Shown here piece after piece: positions 15,553 through 51,500 of a DNA stretch of 64,000 nucleotides. Positions within the stretch are counted from its first letter, which is position 1; every line of letters begins with the position of its first letter. The translations under genes and the position numbers were made by a program. The stretch spans positions 1-64,000 of the forward strand of contig JALMLS010000420.1 in the NCBI GenBank assembly GCA_038496445.1, written 5' to 3'. The stretch is from Trichosphaerium sp. ATCC 40318. Lineage: Eukaryota > Protista > Tubulinea. The notes beneath the pieces are model-generated. The model worked only from the letters and a program-made list of their open reading frames with translations, was not told the origin of the DNA and searched no databases.

Positions 15553-16814
15553 ATGTCCTGGCGGGAAATTTTAAGGGTGAATGCTCTAGCAGAACACCAC
15601 CTAACCAACGAGCAACAGCTACGCTTAAATCAAGTCTCTGAAGTGCTCTGTAGCATATCAAAAGATTTATCGCGGAAAATGCACCTACCCGCCAAAAAAG
15701 CAATGGATGCGCTATACACGTCCATTTTATACAGATTAAAAGCGAAGAGACGAAGACAAAAAATAAAACGTGTACAGCGCCTTGTAGCAGCGAAAAAAAT
15801 AGCCCAAGACGACGAATGGTCACAAATAGATGAAGAAGTAGCAAAATTAGAACGAAATCATGTGCTCGCAGCAGCCAAAAAAAAAATAGCACAAGCGCAA
15901 CTGCGTAGTACTGAGCCTACCTCCAGAGACGCCCCAATGCCCGATGGTGCGCTACAACATTAGTGTCTATCGGTTGCTGACGCTACATCTAGTGAAAAAG
16001 AATCTGATGATCTACAAACATCTACCGCTTGATGAAATCCGCAATAGGTTTGAACAAGTGTTAAAAGCGACTAAAACCAATCCAATCTCGATTGGCAATC
16101 ACACTATTACGTACGATCATTTGAGAGCCCTAAAGCCCGGAGAGTGGCTAAATGATGAAATCATAAACGGTTACATTACACTCTTGAAGGAGCGAGCAAG
16201 CAAACACAAGGACATTGTGGGAAATTGCTATTTCTTCAGCACCTTTTTCCTGACAACGCTAACACGAAACCGTAAATTTACATATGCTAACGTCAGAAGA
16301 TGGACCAAAAGGGTACGCACCATTGTGGGTTCTGGGTAGCACGGTATTAACTTTGTGTTCTTAGGTCGACTTGTTCAGTTTAGATAGAGTTTTTTTCCCA
16401 ATAAATGTCGGCAACAGACATTGGATACTTGGTGTTATAGACATAAAAACCAGGTCCATCTACGTTTATGATAGCAATGGGAGACCTCATGAAAGCTACG
16501 CTTTGGTAGGTTCAGCGTTTGTTATGTTGTATTAACTTGCTCTTTTTTTTGGATAGTGTTTGAGAGCCTACATAATGGAGGAAGCAAAAGATAAACAGAA
16601 ACCAAATTTCGTAGAGTCATGGCGTGTTGTTGAACCACCAGAACCTGTACCCCAGCAACTAAACGAGTCTGACTGTGGCGTGTTTGTGTCGGCGTTCGCA
16701 AATCAGTTGTCTCGTTGTCCTGATGCTAAGCTGAACTTGGACAGCAGGTACCTCGTTGAGTATTATAGAATGCGAATTGGATTGGAGTTACACGATAACG
16801 AAGTGAGCATTTAA
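15553..16814 (+). CDS. SUMO-specific protease (SENP/Ulp1, peptidase C48)
   Basis: LKPGEWLNDEIINGY, YFFSTFF, YANVRRWTK, FFPINVGNRHW (His), YVYDS (Asp), PQQLNESDCGVF (Cys). Confidence 0.93.
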
Positions 16815-25928: not shown

Positions 25929-26171
25929 TTACTATCTATAAATTTGGTGAAATTGGTCTGCCAAATCAAATATTGTATTTTTAGACAAGGGCACGGCCAT
26001 TCAAAGGGATGTGGGCTCAATAAAAAAAAATCACGTGCCACACAAAGGCAGACGCAAAAAAAAAGGCGTGAAACCACAACTAGTAGATACCAGTGTACCG
26101 TTGATTGAATTGGATTCTAACTATTGAGGAGAGCATGTGTCATTCATTTTTTTTTACAAAACCATTCTTTA

Positions 26172-26847
26172 TTACATCAGCGCTTGTGCCTTTCTCGTTT
26201 CATCGACCTCTATGGCCATTGTCAAGTTCTCCACCACTTCCAAGGCCAAGGCATAGAACACGTACACCAGCTTGATAGCAAGGAGTGCAATGAAGAAGGA
26301 GTACAGCTCTTGTGTCGGCCCATTATCGCAGTCTTTGCTGTTGAATATGATCACCAAGCCGAACACACGCCATCCAAAGTTAAACGCGAGTAAACCTGCC
26401 TGTTCGACATTGACCACTATCCAAAAGACAAGCTTCGCAACGTACCCAGAGCACCAATAGTACGCCAAAAAAGTGGCAGCCATTATACTTGCGATTATTA
26501 GATTTGCAATGCCATCAACAGCCAACCAAACAGGCATACCGATCGCTGACAATGCTGCGTTAGCCCACCGTAAAAGTGTACAAAAAAAAACGTTTACGAA
26601 TTTATGTATGTCCTTGTTTTGCAGTGTTTTGACGTAGCAAACGCGTACTGTAAGGCTCTACGGAAATGTAGCCATTTGTTGTAGTGTTAGAGACAATAGC
26701 GCCATAGCAAGGGTGCTCTTTGTGACGGCTGTAAAAAACAAGTTCAGCAATCGCTAGAGCAACTGGTGGCGCTATTAGAAGCATGCCGACTACAATCGCG
26801 ATGATAGAGCCATATCTTCGTACGAAGACGCGTGCTTTTTGTTCCAT
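26172..26847 (-). CDS. Hypothetical four-TM membrane protein, 2 exons
   Basis: Hydrophobic helices in ORFs 26602-26874 and 26172-26552 are joinable across a short intron. No family recognised with certainty. Confidence 0.6.
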
Positions 26848-26932
26848 GAGTGTTGTTCGTGAGAGGTAGTTCACTGTTTGAGGTTATAGCTTAACTTAAT
26901 CGGTTGTGCTTGTACGCAATTTTATAGGTCGA

Positions 26933-27367
26933 ATGTCAGCTACCCGAAATGATGTTGTAAACGTACAAGTTGTAGATGAATGCGGTAACACACACACGTT
27001 CAACGTGGGAAACGATGACGCCTGTAGGTACGACTGACAATGTATTGCGTTTGTTCAAACTCAAAAACGCGTATTTAGAGACCTACTAGCGCTTTTAAAG
27101 CGTCTCGCAGAGAAAGACGGGTTGTACGATATTTTGGGCAATATTGACACAATTGCAATTTCTGATTTTGTGACAGCAGTCAGCGTACAAAGCAGCTGCA
27201 AAACAGTCGCCAGCAAGTTGTTGACGCTGTACAGCGTCGAAACAGCTGAAAAACTAAAAGATGGCACATACACCGATGTTCTTGACGCTGGCGCTCGACT
27301 TTGCCTTTGGGCAAGCGCTCGTAAATCTACTGGAGGCAAAGCACCGAGACGGAAAACGCAGCAATAG
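26933..27367 (+). CDS. Small ubiquitin/SUMO-like protein ending in a histone H3 tail mimic (ARKSTGGKAPR)
   Basis: Exon 26933-27027, intron 27028-27078, exon 27079-27367, all in frame. Beta-grasp-like pattern VNVQVVDECGNTHTFNV..CRDLLALLK...KLKDGTYTDVLDAGARLCLW. Exact H3(7-17) at 27317-27349. Confidence 0.72.
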
Positions 27368-27481
27368 CGCAAGTGAGCGTATAATGTAGTGAGTGGAATA
27401 TAAACCGTGGTGTGTTGGCCACAATAAACTAAAAAAGAGCGTCAATTAGGTTTGACTTTAAGCTTACATTATCTTCTCACC

Positions 27482-28544
27482 ATGTCCACAGCAAAGCTAC
27501 TTGGCGCATTACTAGCAGTGTTTTCTGTTGCAGGGACCACACTTACAGTGTATCACCTCGTCCAATTTTTGAACCCTAACCCACCAACGGACAATACCAT
27601 GTCGGTACGTATCCACAACAGCGTCGTAACATATTTTTAATGAATATAGCCGTTATCTCCTTCTCAGTTCTCATACGCTGTTCTATTTGACGCGTTACTG
27701 GTTGCCGTATTCATGGCGTCACACAGGTATTGTTTTGTTGTTTGGTTTTCTTTCTTGGGTTGTTTTACGCTCATTATTGACTCCGTTAGTGGTTTGGCGC
27801 AGAAAAGACAAGTCCTTCCTATTGAACCTTTTGCCAGGCGCGCTATCTACACACTCGTATCTGTAGTTACATTGGAAACCTTAATATGGTTATGGAAGGT
27901 ATGCAAGGAGTTCTCTGCACGTTGCTTACCAATAACCCTCCTTAGCCACTACCAAAACATGTGTGGGTACTCGAAACACCATTGCTCGTATCGTTGGTGA
28001 CTATCGTGCACTACGTTGGATGGGTTGTACTTTTGTTGTCTTTCCTATCGATCGATCCGCTCTCTTTCCTCGGTGCAAAGCAAGCCCTCATTGCAGACTC
28101 AACCGTAGACGCTGAGACTGCAAAGACCCCCGCCACTCAAAGGCTTTACAAAAACTTGCGTCACCCTCAATTCCTTGGTTTTGCTGTACGTTGGTTGCAT
28201 CAACCCCAATTAATATTAACATTTTTTTTTTAAATGATAATATTTTTCGGGCAGTGCACACCTTAATTTAACTGCTTTTATAGGTTGTCATTTGGACTAC
28301 GAGCGCAATGTCTTTGGATAGATTCTTGTTGTGTCTTTTGTTCAGCATGTACCTCATGTTTGGCCACAGATTGGACGACCAGGACGTAGACTACGTCAAA
28401 TCACGTGCGTGTTATAGCTATTCAACATTTTGAGGCAGCCACGATCCCATCGTATTTCCTTTACCGTGTTATTCACACTTTGTAACAGGTGTTGGTGGCA
28501 AGTTCAATCAACTGAGAGAGAACACAAACCCATGGTGCGTTTAA
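27482..28544 (+). CDS. NRM: Nurim-like nuclear envelope membrane protein
   Basis: LLVAVFMASHS, RAIYTLVS..L..LIWLWKPL, DPLSFLGAKQ, LYKNLRHP, MSLDRFLL..YL..GHRLDDQDVDYV. Last exon approximate. Confidence 0.8.
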
Positions 28545-28862
28545 ACCACATTTTATTCTTTTATTGTACAACGTGCAAATCATCTTTGCATTGTGGACGT
28601 TTGCAGCCAAACAAAGTTTTGTACAGTAGCGATTGTTTGGCTGCAAACAAAATCTATTTACTTTTTTTTTGTTTTTTTTTTCTCTTCCATGAGAGGGACG
28701 TAGAGGGGGACAGAATACTCATTACATTGTAGGAGAAATTATTGAGCACTCGTCACCCTTATGCCCAGTACATGCTTCGTGTATAGAAGCAGTGCGTCTA
28801 TGTGGTTATTTTGTTCTTGAAACAATAAAAAATAGAACAAACCAAAAAAAAAAAAAAGTGTA

Positions 28863-35142: not shown

Positions 35143-38100
35143 ATGCACGCTAGCGTCTTATGCGTGTATTTGCTTTGTGCGTGCGGTTATATATCTATCG
35201 CATTCTCACAATTGATTGCGGGGGGTCCTGGGTACAAAAACATTACTACCACATCTAGATACGCGCAATTACTAATGTCACTTTTTTAAACAGATACGCT
35301 GCTACAGCTTACACCAGAGAACACTATATGGTTATACCTAACACAAATTTATTCACATCACGAGACTTTACGATAGAATTTTGGGCGTACGATACAGCGC
35401 TATCGAGAGTGCCCTCTATCGTGGCCTACGCTGTTAATCGCGGTCCTGGCAGTAAGCTACCAGGGTCACTTGATGATCAAAGGTACCAACCAGCCCGGAA
35501 AAACCAGACAATTGCAATAACTTCGTTTTTGGTTTGACTCTAATATTCTTTGGTAGATTAACGCTATTGGCTGGTGACTCTAGCATCTTGTTCTATTTGG
35601 ATGTTGTTGTGGAGGCAGAAACACCACAACTTACCTCTGGCTGGCACCATTACGCTATTTCTTTTGCAGACAGCGACAAAGTAGCGGCTTTTTACCTGGT
35701 ACGTGCTATCACGATTAGTTTTGGTTTTTTTTTTTACCAGATTTACCTCTTTGTTTTCATAGTTTGTTGTTGGCTTCAAACTAACTCTCATGGTAATGTA
35801 TAGGACGGTGTTGAGTTATTTGCCTCTACCTTGAGTGGGTTAGATACAGTGAGTGCTTTAGAGAATGGAGGAGCGTTTGTTATTGGAAATGAGCAGGTAT
35901 GTAGTATGCACGCATAAAGTGCAACTATCATTATATTAGGGTCCCATGTTGAGTTAATCATATAATCCATAGGACGATCTGGGTTCAGGATTCGACGCTT
36001 CTAGAGCGTGGGTTGGCCAAATAGATGAGCTCAGAGTATGGTCTAGGCGTAGGACAGGTGCGTTGCGGCGGGACTTTGAGGTAGTATCTCTTTGTCGCTT
36101 AGCTTATTTTCATAGTTGCTGAAATACGAGCCTTGATGAACGTTGGCATAACAACGGCGCAATCTGGATCACTGGTTGGTCTCACAGGACTCTATAACTT
36201 CGAGCAATATAATGCCTCCGAAAAAGAGGTAAAACACATTAATTTTATTTTTTTGAAAAAAAGAGCAGTGCTGCTTGTTCTATTCGTGCCTCACTAAAAT
36301 TACTCAAGATTCCAAATGCAATTGGAACTGGATCTTCAATGTTCCTTGCGCACTGGGACATCGAAAACAACGTGTACACTGTTGGTGGCGGTGCGCAGAA
36401 GAGTGGTGTTCGTGGTGTGTCGTCTGCGCCAATCGTGAGTCAGGACGCGCCTACTGTAGTTACAGCTGTTGCCAATGTCGATAGAGTATGTTCGATACCA
36501 CATCTGTTACGCTGTTGTTAACTCTTGCTCGAGGTTATTACACTGCGAGCAAACGATGCCAGTAATGGGCAGCTCGCATACACTATCGCACAGTTTCCAA
36601 CCTATGGATCGCTGTACAAGACTGATGGTGTCACTCAGATATCAACGACGTCAGCTGTGATTGGATCCAACCAACTCATTTACCGCAACGCAGGGTCTGG
36701 ACCTGTCAATGATACTTTTATGTATCAAGTTAGTAACGGTGCACAACAAGCTACAGGATCGGTACTGGTACTTCAAAACACAGCCCCTGTGGCTGTAGAT
36801 GCTGTTATTCCATCAGGTACCAACCGCCACTCTTGGCTGTTTTTTATTTTTTTCGGTTTTTTTATCCAAGTAACAAAAAAACTGTACCGGCCGCTATGCC
36901 GACTATTAACACTGCACTAGAGGAGGATCTACCCGTTGTTGTACAACTAGATTGCGAAGATCCTGATGGAGATTTGCTAACAGCCACAATTGCGTCTCTT
37001 CCAACATCAGGTGCTTTATTTCAATTGGCGGATGACAAAGTGTCTCAAGGTACACTTGTTAAATATCGGTTTCCTTTTTTTTTAATTATGTTTTTATTTA
37101 GGCTCTGTTATCTCCTTGGGTGACACAGTGACACATGCGTCACGTGCGGTGGTATACTCTCCGCCATTGAATGAACCTGCAGATGCAAATTTCACGTTTA
37201 CATGCAGCGATGGCGTGGTTCAATCCAATGCAGGCAACGTACAAATATCTGTAGTTGCGTTCAACGACAAGGCCTTTGTTGGCGGTGGATTATTCGCTGT
37301 AGACATGGATGGCATTGGTGCTTATTTAAATTTCCCAAGTTCTTCTGTACCCATTACTGCCTTTGATTTTTGGCTAAATCCAAGGGTACCTACACTTCTT
37401 CTCTTTTCTATTTTTGTTGATTTTGTTTTGCAAAATGGTTAATTGCCATGTATTTCTTTTTACAAAAGAGTTGTACAACGGTGTGTTAACTGAGATACTT
37501 TAGGCACCGTACGACAAGTCAGTGATTACCATTCTTTCATGGGCTGACATTGACATTAATTTGGGGTACAACCAAGCTACGCAGTCATATTCCATGTGGG
37601 CAGTTAGCACCATTTCAAAGCGATCAGCGACTCCGCCTGTTGGGAGTATACCGACTGGCAATTGGACACATGTGGCGATGGACATTAAAAACAATACCCT
37701 TCGCTTTTTTGTAAACCAACTCGAGGTCGGCACTGCACCTTCCTTGTTTTCCTCTATTGATCCTTCGTCTTTTAATCTCGGAAGAGGAAAGTTTGGTGAG
37801 GGTTTCTACAACGGGGAGGTCGAAGAGGCACGACATTTTTTACCAGGCCCGCTTTTTTTTTGAACGCATGATTTTTCTGCATTCTTGGGCAAACAATGTA
37901 ACTATTCCTTGTTGCTGTACTATTCATTATTTCGTTACCAGTCTAACTTGGCATTAGCTTCGTTTGTGGAATACACCGTACACCCAGGCAGCTCTGTTGT
38001 GGTCTTCTAGACACGCAGTGATTGGCGACGAATTTGGATTGTTGACTGCTTGGGGCTTAAACGAGGGCACAGGTACTGTTGCAAAGAGCGTTGGTCGCAT

Positions 38101-48559: not shown

Positions 48560-51500
48560 TTAGTTTGGAGCTAAACCCCAACTACCAATCATTTGATCTT
48601 CATCACTCTCTTGAATTAATGAAGGGCGTGCTGCTGTTTGCACTGGTGCTGGTGTTGGTGGCTGTGGAGCAATGTCATGCTCTGGATCAAAAAAGTTCTA
48701 GTTGGGAATTAATAGTTGGACAACAGCGCTCATTGCAGTACCTGTAATAGTTCATATGCTAACAGTGTCACTCCAAACTGAGGAGATGATCTAAAAAAGA
48801 AATTACTAATATTGTTACTTGAGATTGATTGCAAACCTTATACACCTAGGCACTATGCCCTTATAAAAAGCTAGAATACCCTCAGAACGGTAAACTTTAA
48901 CAAAGCAATCAACAATGCCATTGTATGTTTGATCTCCAGCACGTGCTTCAACCTGCAACCTTGTTTTGACAACATCAAAAGGTGTTGTCATTGACGCTGA
49001 AATCAAACCTATTAACATGTATGTAAGCTCTTTTGAACAACAACCCAATTATCAGTGCCTGCAAAGGATCCTGCAAGCAAGTAATTCATGGCACTCTCCT
49101 CGCCAGTATCAGCATCTCTCATCAACTGCTTTGATTTGGCATAAAGTGGAAAATAGATAGCCGAAAATGGGATATCACGACTAAAGCATGCAGGTGCGCC
49201 TTTATATAATCCAAAAAAGCCAAGCTCACGAACAATAGTAACAGCACCTTTGGGCTTTAAGCCATAACGTGTGGCAAGCTAGCACTGGTGTAAATTTACA
49301 TTTTGGTATAGCACCGCTTATAAAAAGAAATAGTACGCACTTCGCCTTGTACTTGCAATCTGATCTTTACAATTTCTATTGGGTTGGTAAACACGACCTG
49401 TGACATACCAGCACAACCACCGGCGAGTATTTCTAATGGCAAATACATGCTGTCTTCAGATTGGCCTGCCTGCTGGAATAGCCCGCTGGTATGATTGTCA
49501 GTAGTGTTTTTACAATTATTATCAAATACACATGACGGTACGTACCGAAGTAGATCGTTGACTACAAGCTTGATAGCTTTTTCAGGTGCAACACCTACCA
49601 GCTGTGGCAGTAAACCACGATACAAGCCTGTGGGTCCTTCATTCCTAAAGTAATGAGCCTCACGCTGTGGCGCACTAGTTTTGGTGTGTTTTGACCATAC
49701 TTTATAACCTGTGTAAAGCAATCCCAACTATTTTTGTACATTTGTTTTGCTGCTAAAGATTTTACATTTAGCAAGCTGCACAACTAGACATTATTACAAA
49801 CCCGAAGCATCACCAGCGGAGCCTCTCTGATTTTGCATCCTAGTTTTGACCAGATCGATAGGATAGACAGCTGTCGCTCCAATCGCACCAGCCACAGCGC
49901 CAATGCCAAACGACTTTGCGGCCAGTAGTAGTTTTTGCATAGGCGTTTTGTTGTTTGTGGCAGCATTGAGCTACAAAAAGGCAACAAAAGTAAGCTTCAA
50001 TTGGGGCAGGTGGTAATCAACCAAAACATAGAGAAGAAACAAACCATGCTTTAAATGGATGGCGCACCCTGTGGATATCGAACAAACGCATGTTAGATCG
50101 ATCCTTCATCACATACAGGAAGGTGTCAACATCAAGCATGCTGTGACGCCTTGGGTTGTCAAAAATGTGGAACAGGACGTCAAGTTGATTCGTTGAAAGT
50201 AAAGTGTCAGCTGTTTGCTGAGTTACTCTCCCCAATTGCGCTACCACCACGTGTCAGAGGTTAAAAGCAAGTGTTGTGTTGTACAGAAAAAGAAAAAAAA
50301 AATGTACAAAGTGATTACGCACATCTGCCAACACCTAACCCAGCAACCGAATTGGTCATGCGAAGTGCTTTTTCAAAGGCTGGAAAATTATCTAATACTT
50401 TGTGAAAGTTGGCGTAGTCATCCAATGAAATCTGGCAGTCTGCATATGCTTCATCCACGCTTTCCAAGTTTTGGTGCGTATGCTTAGGCAACCTACACAA
50501 TCGCTTGGGTTAGAAGAACCACAGCGCAATTCAATCAAAAATTGTTTTCGGCATACATTTTAGGATTGGTGTTAATCGCCACCAATGTTGTAAAGTCCTT
50601 TGCAGAGAGCATGCCGTTGGATTTCTTAAACTGGCTGAATTCCTACTCAAAAAAAACCGATTGTTACAACGAGATAAGGGTACGAGGTGTGAGCGCCATA
50701 CTTGTTGTAAGAGTCCTATTTTCAAATCTGCTATCAATCTCGTAAAGTCTTTGAGGCTGATGCGATTCTCTCCATCTTGGCCAAAAAAATTATCCCAGTA
50801 TCCAGAAGTAAACGCAAACGTCAAATGTCCACATGCGCGCATAAGAGATCTGAACTCGTCTAGCAAGCAATTTTAATAAAAATAATAGTAATATCGGCGT
50901 TGAGCCTCTTTAATATTTTACTTTGAAGCGCTCTTACAAATACTAAATTGATTCACACGCACCTTTAGAGCAGTATCCATCTCCTTCCGTGTCAAATAAT
51001 TTAAATGCTGTCTCAAACTCCTTCTCTGACGTAGCGAGCAGCGTGTCAAAAAACACAAATTCAGAAAAGGAGATTGTCTTTTCACCACTTGATTCTCGAG
51101 GTCGGAATAGAGTGTTAAACGGGTCTGTGTCAGTGCCATCAGTTTCCTACGCATGCGTCAGAGGTTGGGGTATCGTTTTGTTGGTACAGAACAAGTTACC
51201 ACCCCAGTAAAAATAAAATGCGACAAAACAACAGATTTTTTTGAAATATTTTAAACTAACTGTTACCACTCATCAAAAATACCAATGCGTACAGGAGTTG
51301 GCGGTTTAGGTTTACGTTTACCGTTCTTCCCCTTGCCGGTGTCACCAGTCAAGTTAATTGAGGCAATAAAATCGCCTTTTGTCATGTACTTCTCGCCATC
51401 AATGGTGATGGAAGCGTACTGCTTGTAGATATTATCAAGCTTTTTGAGCGTTTCCTTGGCGTTGTTAGCGATAACACGCATGAAGAACATCTTTTCGTAC

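What the first reader, a model, noticed from the sequence alone, without database searches (positions are those of the whole stretch)
26933..27367. Ubiquitin/SUMO-like protein whose C-terminal di-glycine sits inside an exact histone H3 tail copy
SEEN: the spliced ORF reads MSATRNDVVNVQVVDECGNTHTFNVGNDDACRDLLALLKRLAEKDG...LLTLYSVETAEKLKDGTYTDVLDAGARLCLWAS-ARKSTGGKAPR-RKTQQ*. The 11 residues at 27317-27349 are identical to histone H3 A7-R17 (K9, S10, T11, K14), but there is no histone fold and the motif is C-terminal. KNOWN: ubiquitin-family proteins start beta-beta-alpha, end ...LEDG.TL.D......TLHLV...GG, and are matured by cleavage after GG. SUMO ends in TGG plus a short extension removed by Ulp/SENP proteases. 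H3K9/S10/K14 are substrates for SUV39/G9a, Aurora B and GCN5-type enzymes and are read by HP1. INFERENCE: H3 T11-G12-G13 falls where a UBL di-Gly would be. The protein could be (a) a conjugatable modifier carrying an ARKS mark site onto targets, with processing gated by K9/S10/K14 modification, or (b) a free histone-mimic decoy. I know of no described UBL with this design.
Basis: partly seen in the sequence, partly recalled or inferred. Interest (0 to 1): 0.9.

Follow-up and report, generated by a model that had tools for sequence, protein, structure and literature searches.

The report
Small amoeba protein ending in H3 tail
A real, transcribed and spliced gene for a 127-residue orphan protein ends in an exact 11-residue copy of the histone H3 tail (residues 7-17), so it is most likely a host-made histone mimic; I found nothing to support the idea that it is a ubiquitin- or SUMO-like modifier.

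Summary
A two-exon ORF (26933-27027 and 27079-27367) encodes 127 residues. Codons 27317-27349 spell A-R-K-S-T-G-G-K-A-P-R, identical to histone H3 residues 7-17, with conservative flanks (Ser for T6, Arg for K18).

Contigs from an independent RNA run show the 51-nt intron removed exactly. They also show no splice at 27124-27176/9, so the motif is in frame in the mRNA.

The protein is an orphan:
- no Pfam family
- no relative among 1.84 billion representative proteins, apart from two probably spurious bacterial repeat-protein hits
- nothing in metagenome or viral contigs
- no ubiquitin-like protein (UBL) among solved structures, even at E = 10

The beta-grasp claim could not be tested properly. 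The spliced protein has no reference, so only exon 2 was folded, and that model was uninformative (pLDDT 52).

Best reading: an acidic body (net -6) carries a basic C-terminal H3-tail mimic (net +6) that offers the K9/S10/K14 region to histone writers, readers or erasers. Function is inferred, not shown.

The scan has already noted many other H3-tail pieces on other DNA of this same genome, fused to F-box, NACHT-TPR and vWA proteins. It had not noted this gene.

The free-mimic part is plausible.

The parts
26906..27437 (+). Transcribed region seen in RNA contigs; the mRNA is about 481 nt after splicing and the ORF fills about 80% of it
   Evidence: run X4 records 10 and 11. No ATG lies between the divergent upstream gene's transcript end (26848) and 26933.
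26933..27027 (+). Coding exon 1 (M1 to the first two bases of R32). Residues 8-25 read like a beta-hairpin.
   Evidence: The hairpin is my reading of the alternating pattern, not a tool result.
27028..27078 (+). Intron 1: GT..AG, 51 nt, phase 2, with an in-frame TGA
   Evidence: Joint 27024->27076 (cut +3) in X4; sequence.
27079..27367 (+). Coding exon 2 (R32 to Q127 plus the TAG stop). It is colinear in RNA and has no second intron.
27317..27349 (+). Exact copy of histone H3 residues 7-17 (K9 at 27323-25, S10 at 27326-28, T11 at 27329-31, G12-G13 at 27332-37, K14 at 27338-40)
27314..27364 (+). Basic C-terminal tail of 17 residues (net charge +6, pI about 12). It has no secondary structure and pLDDT below 50 in the model.
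27423..27428 (+). AATAAA polyadenylation-type signal, 9 nt before the last base covered by the RNA contig
   Evidence: Sequence; contig end 27437.

Best explanation
This is a genuine, expressed, lineage-restricted gene for a 13.7-kDa protein. It has an acidic, probably folded body of about 110 residues and a basic, probably disordered 17-residue C-terminal tail. The core of that tail is copied from histone H3 residues 7-17. The most likely mode of action is histone mimicry. The tail presents the K9/S10/T11/K14 segment, in its native sequence context, to proteins that recognise internal parts of the H3 tail. These include K9 and K14 methyltransferases and acetyltransferases, S10 kinases, chromodomain, 14-3-3 and bromodomain-type readers, and the matching erasers. 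The protein would therefore be modified or bound like H3 and would either compete with chromatin or be recruited by the same machinery. It lacks H3 residues 1-6, so readers that need the free H3 N-terminus are excluded. Shown here: the gene, its splicing, the frame, the exact identity and the orphan status. Inferred: that the tail is disordered and accessible, that it is recognised by histone enzymes or readers, and that this has a cellular consequence.
For: Gene model and frame. Independent spliced RNA contigs cover the whole CDS, and indels are confined to the UTRs. 11/11 identity to H3 7-17, with conservative residues at positions 6 and 18. The motif is unique in the window and not expected by chance. 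Body net charge is -6 and tail net charge is +6, with pI 4.5 against 12. The tail has no secondary structure and pLDDT below 50. Short H3-like motifs in disordered parts of non-histone proteins are an established mechanism (G9a ARKT, bound by HP1 after methylation; influenza NS1 C-terminal ARSK): PMC6028506. Earlier notes of this scan, not checked by me, report many other H3-tail pieces on unrelated proteins of this genome, two of them followed up by agents.
Against: There is no functional data of any kind. No orthologue was found, so conservation of the motif over time is unknown, and a recently captured fragment would be identical without any selection. Transcripts of this gene were found in only one of three studies that contain the neighbouring genes' mRNAs. 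The two strains differ by two amino-acid changes and one silent change, which gives no sign of constraint. The fold and location of the body are unknown, and nuclear localisation is unproven.
Confidence: 0.45

Rival explanations
1. A young chimeric orphan gene. A 33-39-nt piece of an H3 gene was captured at the 3' end of a de novo or fast-evolving ORF. The mRNA is made, but the H3 patch has no selected function.
For: No homologue turned up anywhere. Transcripts were seen in only one of three studies. The strains differ by two non-synonymous changes and one synonymous change. The genome is reported to hold many scattered H3-tail pieces, which could reflect a mutational process rather than selection (unchecked notes).
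Against: The ORF fills about 80% of a compact mRNA. The intron carries an in-frame stop and is removed precisely. Strain indels avoid the CDS. The flanks at H3 positions 6 and 18 have changed conservatively while the 11-residue core is perfect, which hints at a copy that has diverged at its edges but not in its core. A follow-up note on another H3-tail gene reports that distant relatives keep the motif (unchecked).
Confidence: 0.25
2. Bait or decoy for pathogen effectors. The free H3(7-17) copy is a stand-in target for enzymes of intracellular bacteria or giant viruses that modify the H3 tail. It would either soak them up or report their activity to partner proteins, alongside the H3-tail fusions to F-box, NACHT-TPR and vWA proteins noted elsewhere in this genome.
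For: The SET domain of the Legionella effectors LegAS4/RomA contacts H3 K9-R17 and selects a G-K-X-P/A motif with G12-G13 in a narrow groove. All of this lies inside the copied segment (bioRxiv 10.64898/2026.05.29.728679). Earlier notes call the organism an amoeba and describe histone, ubiquitin-tail and ribosomal P-stalk pieces placed in trap- or receptor-like proteins (unchecked).
Against: The same paper shows that the effectors' ankyrin domain must also engage the H3 N-terminus (R2, K4) for nucleosome engagement and K14 methylation, and this protein lacks that part. The protein has no signalling or trap domain. No infection-dependent expression data exist. The supporting pattern rests on AI notes I could not check.
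Confidence: 0.12
3. Transport or handling signal. The H3-tail copy with its following R-R-K acts as a karyopherin- or histone-chaperone-binding signal, as the real H3 tail does for its import receptors, and brings the acidic body into the nucleus or onto the histone supply chain.
For: The tail is strongly basic (+6) and ends in K-A-P-R-R-K. The H3 tail is itself a recognised import signal for importin-4-type receptors (title and abstract of bioRxiv 10.1101/2022.04.08.487665; otherwise my own knowledge).
Against: A 13.7-kDa protein can cross nuclear pores without a signal. A generic basic stretch would do, and nothing in this model explains exact identity over 11 residues.
Confidence: 0.1
4. 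One reading: a beta-grasp ubiquitin/SUMO-like modifier, cut after T-G-G and conjugated to targets, carrying an ARKS mark site.
For: There are about 116 residues before G-G, followed by a 9-residue extension. The start looks like hairpin then helix, and there is an L-K-D-G ... hydrophobic strand ... G-G spacing like ubiquitin's L-E-D-G ... G-G (pattern reading only). An intact Ulp1/SENP-type C48 protease gene lies about 10 kb upstream on the same strand.
Against: No UBL family or structure matches at any permissive threshold. The only model obtained is helical, though of low confidence and lacking exon 1. There are about 30 extra residues in the middle. The G-G is simply H3 G12-G13. Gene proximity at 10 kb means little in a eukaryote, and C48 proteases are housekeeping genes.
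Confidence: 0.05

Closest known systems
Histone H3 N-terminal tail (canonical H3.1/H3.3)
   Same: Residues 7-17 are identical (11/11), and positions 6 and 18 are conservative. The copy contains K9, S10, T11 and K14 in native context.
   Different: There is no histone fold (no PF00125 hit). The segment is at the C-terminus, not the N-terminus. Residues 1-6 and everything after 18 are absent. The rest of the protein is unrelated and acidic.
Histone mimics in non-histone proteins (G9a/GLP ARKT, influenza A NS1 C-terminal ARSK, SARS-CoV-2 ORF8 ARKS, LIG1, NOP16)
   Same: An H3-like linear motif sits in an apparently unstructured part of a non-histone protein. As in NS1, it is at the C-terminal end (PMC6028506; titles).
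   Different: Known mimics copy 4-6 residues, whereas this one copies 11 exactly (13 with the conservative flanks) and spans two modification hubs, K9/S10 and K14. It is host-encoded in a protist, on an orphan protein with no enzymatic or chromatin domain. No modification or binding has been shown.
Ubiquitin/SUMO-family modifiers
   Same: Similar size before a G-G, a short C-terminal extension after it, and a T-G-G as in SUMO.
   Different: There is no detectable sequence or profile similarity, the fold is not established, and the middle region is longer. The G-G belongs to the copied H3 segment.
Integrated decoys of plant NLR immune receptors (a concept, not a family)
   Same: A copy of a pathogen-targeted host segment placed in another protein. 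Earlier notes report H3-tail pieces on NACHT-TPR, F-box and vWA proteins in this genome.
   Different: This protein has no receptor or signalling domain. No pathogen link has been shown, and the genome-wide pattern rests on unchecked notes.

Membership tests
Ubiquitin-like (beta-grasp) modifiers | Beta-grasp fold | tested here: inconclusive
   Only exon 2 (residues 33-127) could be folded by reference. The AlphaFold2 single-sequence model had pLDDT 52 and pTM 0.34 and was all-helical. The full spliced protein has no reference and was not folded.
Ubiquitin-like (beta-grasp) modifiers | Match to a UBL sequence profile or to a solved UBL | tested here: not met
   No Pfam family at E<=10 for either exon. 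phmmer against PDB at E<=10 returned only H3 chains. No UBL cluster was among the Atlas neighbours.
Ubiquitin-like (beta-grasp) modifiers | C-terminal Gly-Gly a few residues after the last strand, exposed by processing | tested here: inconclusive
   G117-G118 exist, with 9 residues after them. They are H3 G12-G13 of the copied segment. Processing cannot be seen in sequence.
Ubiquitin-like (beta-grasp) modifiers | E1/E2-dependent conjugation to targets | not testable with these tools
   Needs tagging and immunoblotting or mass spectrometry.
Histone H3 | Histone fold domain | tested here: not met
   No PF00125 or any other Pfam hit. The PDB alignment is confined to query residues 78-92 of exon 2.
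Histone H3 | N-terminal tail sequence | tested here: met
   11/11 identity to residues 7-17 only; residues 1-6 are absent.
Histone mimics (H3-like short linear motif in a non-histone protein) | H3-identical motif around a modifiable lysine in a protein without a histone fold | tested here: met
Histone mimics (H3-like short linear motif in a non-histone protein) | Motif lies in an accessible, disordered region | tested here: inconclusive
   The tail has no secondary structure and pLDDT below 50 and is terminal and highly charged. The whole model is of low confidence.
Histone mimics (H3-like short linear motif in a non-histone protein) | Motif is modified or bound by histone-directed enzymes or readers | not testable with these tools
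   Needs mass spectrometry, peptide pull-downs and enzyme assays.
DUF5122 beta-propeller repeats (from the only database hit) | Match to the family profile | tested here: not met
   Pfam PF17164 does not hit exon 2 at E<=10. The phmmer hit P0001 (E 1.3e-4) sums five weak stretches in a 21-repeat protein, and the best single stretch scores 26 bits.

The most novel reading that the evidence does not exclude
The protein is a free bait in a wider amoebal surveillance system. In that system, exact copies of pathogen-targeted host segments (histone tails, the ubiquitin tail, ribosomal stalk tails) are placed on sensor, ligase-adaptor and trap proteins. Modification of this H3(7-17) copy by an invading effector, for example a K14-directed SET enzyme whose footprint K9-R17 it contains in full, would be what is sensed or absorbed.
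Probability: 0.12. Interest if true: 0.85.

Novelty: new variant of a known kind. Interest (0 to 1): 0.55.

Why it matters
Histone mimicry is known mostly from viruses and from a few animal proteins, and it involves motifs of four to six residues. Here a protist encodes a small protein whose only recognisable feature is an exact 11-residue copy of the most heavily regulated part of the H3 tail.

If the tail is modified or read, this would be a simple natural tool, and a target, for studying how K9/S10/K14 enzymes and readers are titrated outside chromatin.

Together with the other H3-tail-bearing genes noted in this genome, it would point to systematic reuse of histone-tail segments as modules. 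That reuse might serve defence against chromatin-targeting pathogens of amoebae.

If the patch is instead a neutral capture, it is still a clean example of how such modules arise.

Tried and rejected
1. Rejected: X4 contigs run colinear through 27076-27157 and 27138-27437.

2. Reassigned stop codons. Run X3 holds a contig that matches only 27317-27349. Its flanks are a true H3 mRNA with TAG at Gln5 and Gln19, so I asked whether TAG is Gln here and the ORF runs on. Rejected: the spliced downstream gene reads 236 codons without any stop under the standard code. That contig belongs to another organism in a very large mixed run. At most the protein would gain three residues before a TGA.

3. Homologues. 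I found none with the word-indexed search of 5.8 billion clusters, with degenerate-pattern scans of metagenome contigs or with scans of viral contigs. Full HMMER against 1.84 billion representatives gave two hits at E of 1e-4 to 1e-3. Both are bacterial repeat proteins, one with 21 DUF5122 repeats and one with SLH and InlB B-repeats. Both scores are sums of several weak stretches, and the family's own Pfam profile does not recognise the query, so I treat them as spurious.

4. Paralogues or further H3/H4/ubiquitin-tail motifs in the window. None.

5. Fold. AlphaFold2 on exon 2 alone was uninformative. I did not run fold searches on it, because a low-confidence model gives meaningless matches. 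A hydrophobic-moment scan run locally shows one strong amphipathic helix (residues 28-45) and beta-type periodicity at residues 100-111. It is compatible with many folds.

6. ESM Atlas feature search, on the whole of exon 2 and on the body only. All scores were below 0.9, which is noise.

7. Neighbouring genes as a clue. The exons tested from both flanking genes have no Pfam family. Both look like membrane proteins.

8. Literature. No paper in the library combines histone mimicry or integrated decoys with amoebae.

Full report
**What is there**

- The ATG is at 26933.
- Exon 1 runs to 27027.
- A GT..AG intron occupies 27028-27078. It is 51 nt, phase 2, and holds an in-frame TGA.
- Exon 2 runs from 27079 to the TAG at 27365-27367.
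- The product is 127 residues and 13.7 kDa.

Codons 27317-27349 spell A-R-K-S-T-G-G-K-A-P-R. A phmmer search of exon 2 against all PDB chain sequences returned 58 sequences at E up to 10. All of them are histone H3 or H3 peptides, aligned to H3 residues 7-17 with every position identical. The residue before the copy is Ser where H3 has Thr6. The residue after it is Arg where H3 has Lys18. The similarity therefore spans 13 positions.

The 33-mer occurs once in the window even when 3 mismatches are allowed, and it never occurs in 100 shuffles. No other H3, H4 or ubiquitin-tail motif longer than a bare ARKS is present in any frame of the window. An exact 11-residue match to a given protein segment cannot be chance. 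It must derive from an H3 gene.

**Is it a real gene, and is the motif translated?**

The sequencing-run search found no run labelled as RNA. However, laying the contigs of four runs on 26100-28600 showed GT..AG-spliced contigs for both neighbouring genes, so these runs are RNA or cDNA.

Run X4 comes from a 2023 study of 'organism C'. It holds two contigs for this gene.
- One covers 26906-27024 joined to 27076 and on for 82 letters. The 51-nt skip is placed with 3 ambiguous letters, which gives exactly 27028-27078.
- The other is colinear over 27138-27437.

These contigs establish four things.
- Intron 1 is removed as predicted.
- The H3-like codons lie in frame in the mRNA.
- The transcript ends about 9 nt after an AATAAA at 27423-27428.

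No ATG lies between the divergent upstream gene's transcript end (26848) and 26933. The ORF fills about 80% of a roughly 481-nt mRNA.

X4 differs from the window by D7N, Q12R and one silent change, and by a 1-nt and a 2-nt indel that both fall in the UTRs. It is therefore an independent allele or strain, not the window's own data, and the junctions of the H3 patch with its flanks are not an assembly artefact.

Runs X1, X2 and X3 hold the neighbours' mRNAs but no contig of this gene, so expression is not universal.

**A false trail on the genetic code**

X3 contains a contig that matches only the 33-nt patch, at 90-95% identity. Its loose ends read as a true H3 mRNA with TAG at the positions of Gln5 and Gln19. 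That raised the possibility of a TAG=Gln genetic code.

The downstream gene, spliced as four runs show it, reads 236 codons with no stop under the standard code. ORF statistics do not favour a TGA-only code either. The H3 contig belongs to another organism in a very large mixed run. The stop at 27365 stands.

**Relatives**

None were found.
- The word-indexed search of 5.8 billion protein clusters gave nothing, not even the protein itself.
- Pfam gave no family for either exon at E up to 10.
- Degenerate-pattern scans with the body alone (residues 33-111, leaving out the H3 patch so that true histones would not swamp the result) found no relative in JGI metagenome contigs or IMG/VR viral contigs.
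- Exhaustive HMMER against 1.84 billion representatives gave only two hits, at E 1.3e-4 and 6.5e-4.

Both HMMER hits are long bacterial repeat proteins. One has 21 DUF5122 beta-propeller repeats. The other has SLH and InlB-type B repeats. Their scores are sums of four or five weak stretches, with best single stretches of 26-29 bits. The DUF5122 Pfam profile itself does not see the query. I treat both as repeat-inflated chance matches.

ESM-Atlas feature neighbours all score below 0.9 and none is a UBL. There is no paralogue in the window. The gene is an orphan as far as these tools can see.

**The ubiquitin-like claim**

I could only partly run it.

Exon 2 alone (residues 33-127), folded without an alignment, gave pLDDT 52 and pTM 0.34, with six helices and an unstructured last 12 residues. 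This is too weak to accept or reject any fold, and I ran no fold search on it.

A local hydrophobic-moment scan shows a strong amphipathic helix at residues 28-45 and beta-type periodicity at 100-111.

Several points argue against the claim.
- No UBL profile or solved UBL is matched at permissive thresholds.
- The segment between the first helix and L-K-D-G is about 30 residues longer than in ubiquitin.
- The G-G needs no UBL explanation, because it is G12-G13 of the copied H3 segment.

One coincidence deserves a mention. An intact-looking Ulp1/SENP-type C48 protease gene lies at about 15553-16814 on the same strand. Its three exons hit PF02902 in order and carry the His and Cys motifs. It sits about 10 kb upstream. 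Such proteases cut after T-G-G in SUMO. They are also housekeeping genes, and a 10-kb distance in a eukaryote is no evidence of a link.

**What it most likely is**

The anatomy is an acidic body (net -6, pI 4.5) followed by a 17-residue basic tail (net +6, pI about 12).

The tail holds the complete K9-S10-T11 and K14 context. It lacks H3 residues 1-6, so anything that needs the free H3 N-terminus is excluded. Enzymes and readers of the internal segment are not.

This is the design of a histone mimic. That mechanism was established for G9a, whose ARKT motif is automethylated and then bound by HP1, and for the unstructured C-terminus of influenza NS1, with its ARSK motif (PMC6028506). The copy here is two to three times longer.

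I therefore put histone-tail mimicry first, at 0.45. The mechanism is inferred from sequence only.

**Context from the scan**

Earlier notes, which I did not check, call the organism an amoeba. They list many H3-tail pieces on unrelated proteins elsewhere in this genome: F-box, NACHT-TPR, vWA, VIT-vWA-TPR, and a spliced mini-gene without a histone fold. They also list a ubiquitin-tail bait in a macroglobulin and ribosomal stalk-tail arrays. Two or three of these have been followed up by agents.

This changed my reading. The gene looks like one member of a genome-wide habit of reusing tails of conserved proteins as modules, not a one-off. The pattern suggests the decoy or bait rival.

In support of that rival, the SET domain of the Legionella effectors LegAS4/RomA contacts exactly H3 K9-R17 and selects G-K-X-P/A with the two glycines in a narrow groove. 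Against it, the same work shows that the effectors' ankyrin domain must also read the H3 N-terminus, which this protein lacks. The protein also has no signalling domain.

**Other rivals**

- A neutral young chimera (0.25) cannot be excluded without orthologues or the genome's own H3 DNA.
- A transport or chaperone signal (0.10) does not explain exact identity over 11 residues.
- The UBL modifier (0.05) has no positive evidence.

**Novelty and score**

No paper in the searchable library links histone mimicry or integrated decoys to amoebae.

I class the finding as a new variant of a known kind, histone mimicry. It is host-encoded in a protist, 11-13 residues long, C-terminal, and sits on an orphan body.

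Interest is moderate to high (0.55). The object is real, expressed and odd. Its function is untested, its fold is unknown, and this scan has already noted several sister cases in the same genome.

Noticed in passing
window 15553-16814 (+): Multi-exon Ulp1/SENP-type C48 cysteine peptidase gene. Three exon ORFs hit PF02902 in profile order (1-75, 81-120, 133-188) and carry the catalytic His (..RHW..) and Cys (..SDCGVF..) motifs. It lies about 10 kb upstream of the H3-tail gene on the same strand.
   Followed up: partly
window 27317-27349, run X3: A contig in a very large mixed run matches only the 33-nt patch (90-95% identity). Its flanks read as a true histone H3 mRNA with TAG at the Gln5 and Gln19 positions, so an organism with TAG=Gln (ciliate-type code) is present in that sample. 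It is not the window's organism.
   Followed up: partly
window 27479-28535 (+): Downstream gene, seen spliced in four runs with five short GT..AG introns (45-98 nt). It gives a 236-codon open frame for a multi-pass membrane-like protein. The one exon tested (27946-28185) had no Pfam hit. Its transcript starts only about 45 nt after the H3-tail gene's mRNA ends.
   Followed up: partly
window 26138-26848 (-): Divergent upstream gene with a 103-nt intron (26546-26648), membrane-like and with no Pfam hit. Its transcript end is only about 58 nt from the first base of the H3-tail gene's RNA contig, so the two probably share a bidirectional promoter. Even so, runs X1 and X2 show the upstream gene's mRNA and not the H3-tail gene's.
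   Followed up: no
whole window: Only one ORF of 200 aa or more in 64 kb under the standard code, GC 41%, introns of 45-103 nt. This is an intron-dense eukaryote with short exons. Other Pfam hits in long ORFs are mitochondrial carrier (49299-49727, -), Cadherin_3-like (36525-36917, +) and weak LRR (492-1022, +).
   Followed up: no
window 27086-27295 (residues 39-50 and 89-101 of the protein): Two similar stretches about 51 residues apart (R-L-A-E-K-D-G-L-Y-D-I-L and K-L-K-D-G-T-Y-T-D-V-L-D). They are what aligned to the roughly 50-residue repeats of the bacterial DUF5122 protein. This is a possible weak internal repeat and is unexplained.
   Followed up: partly
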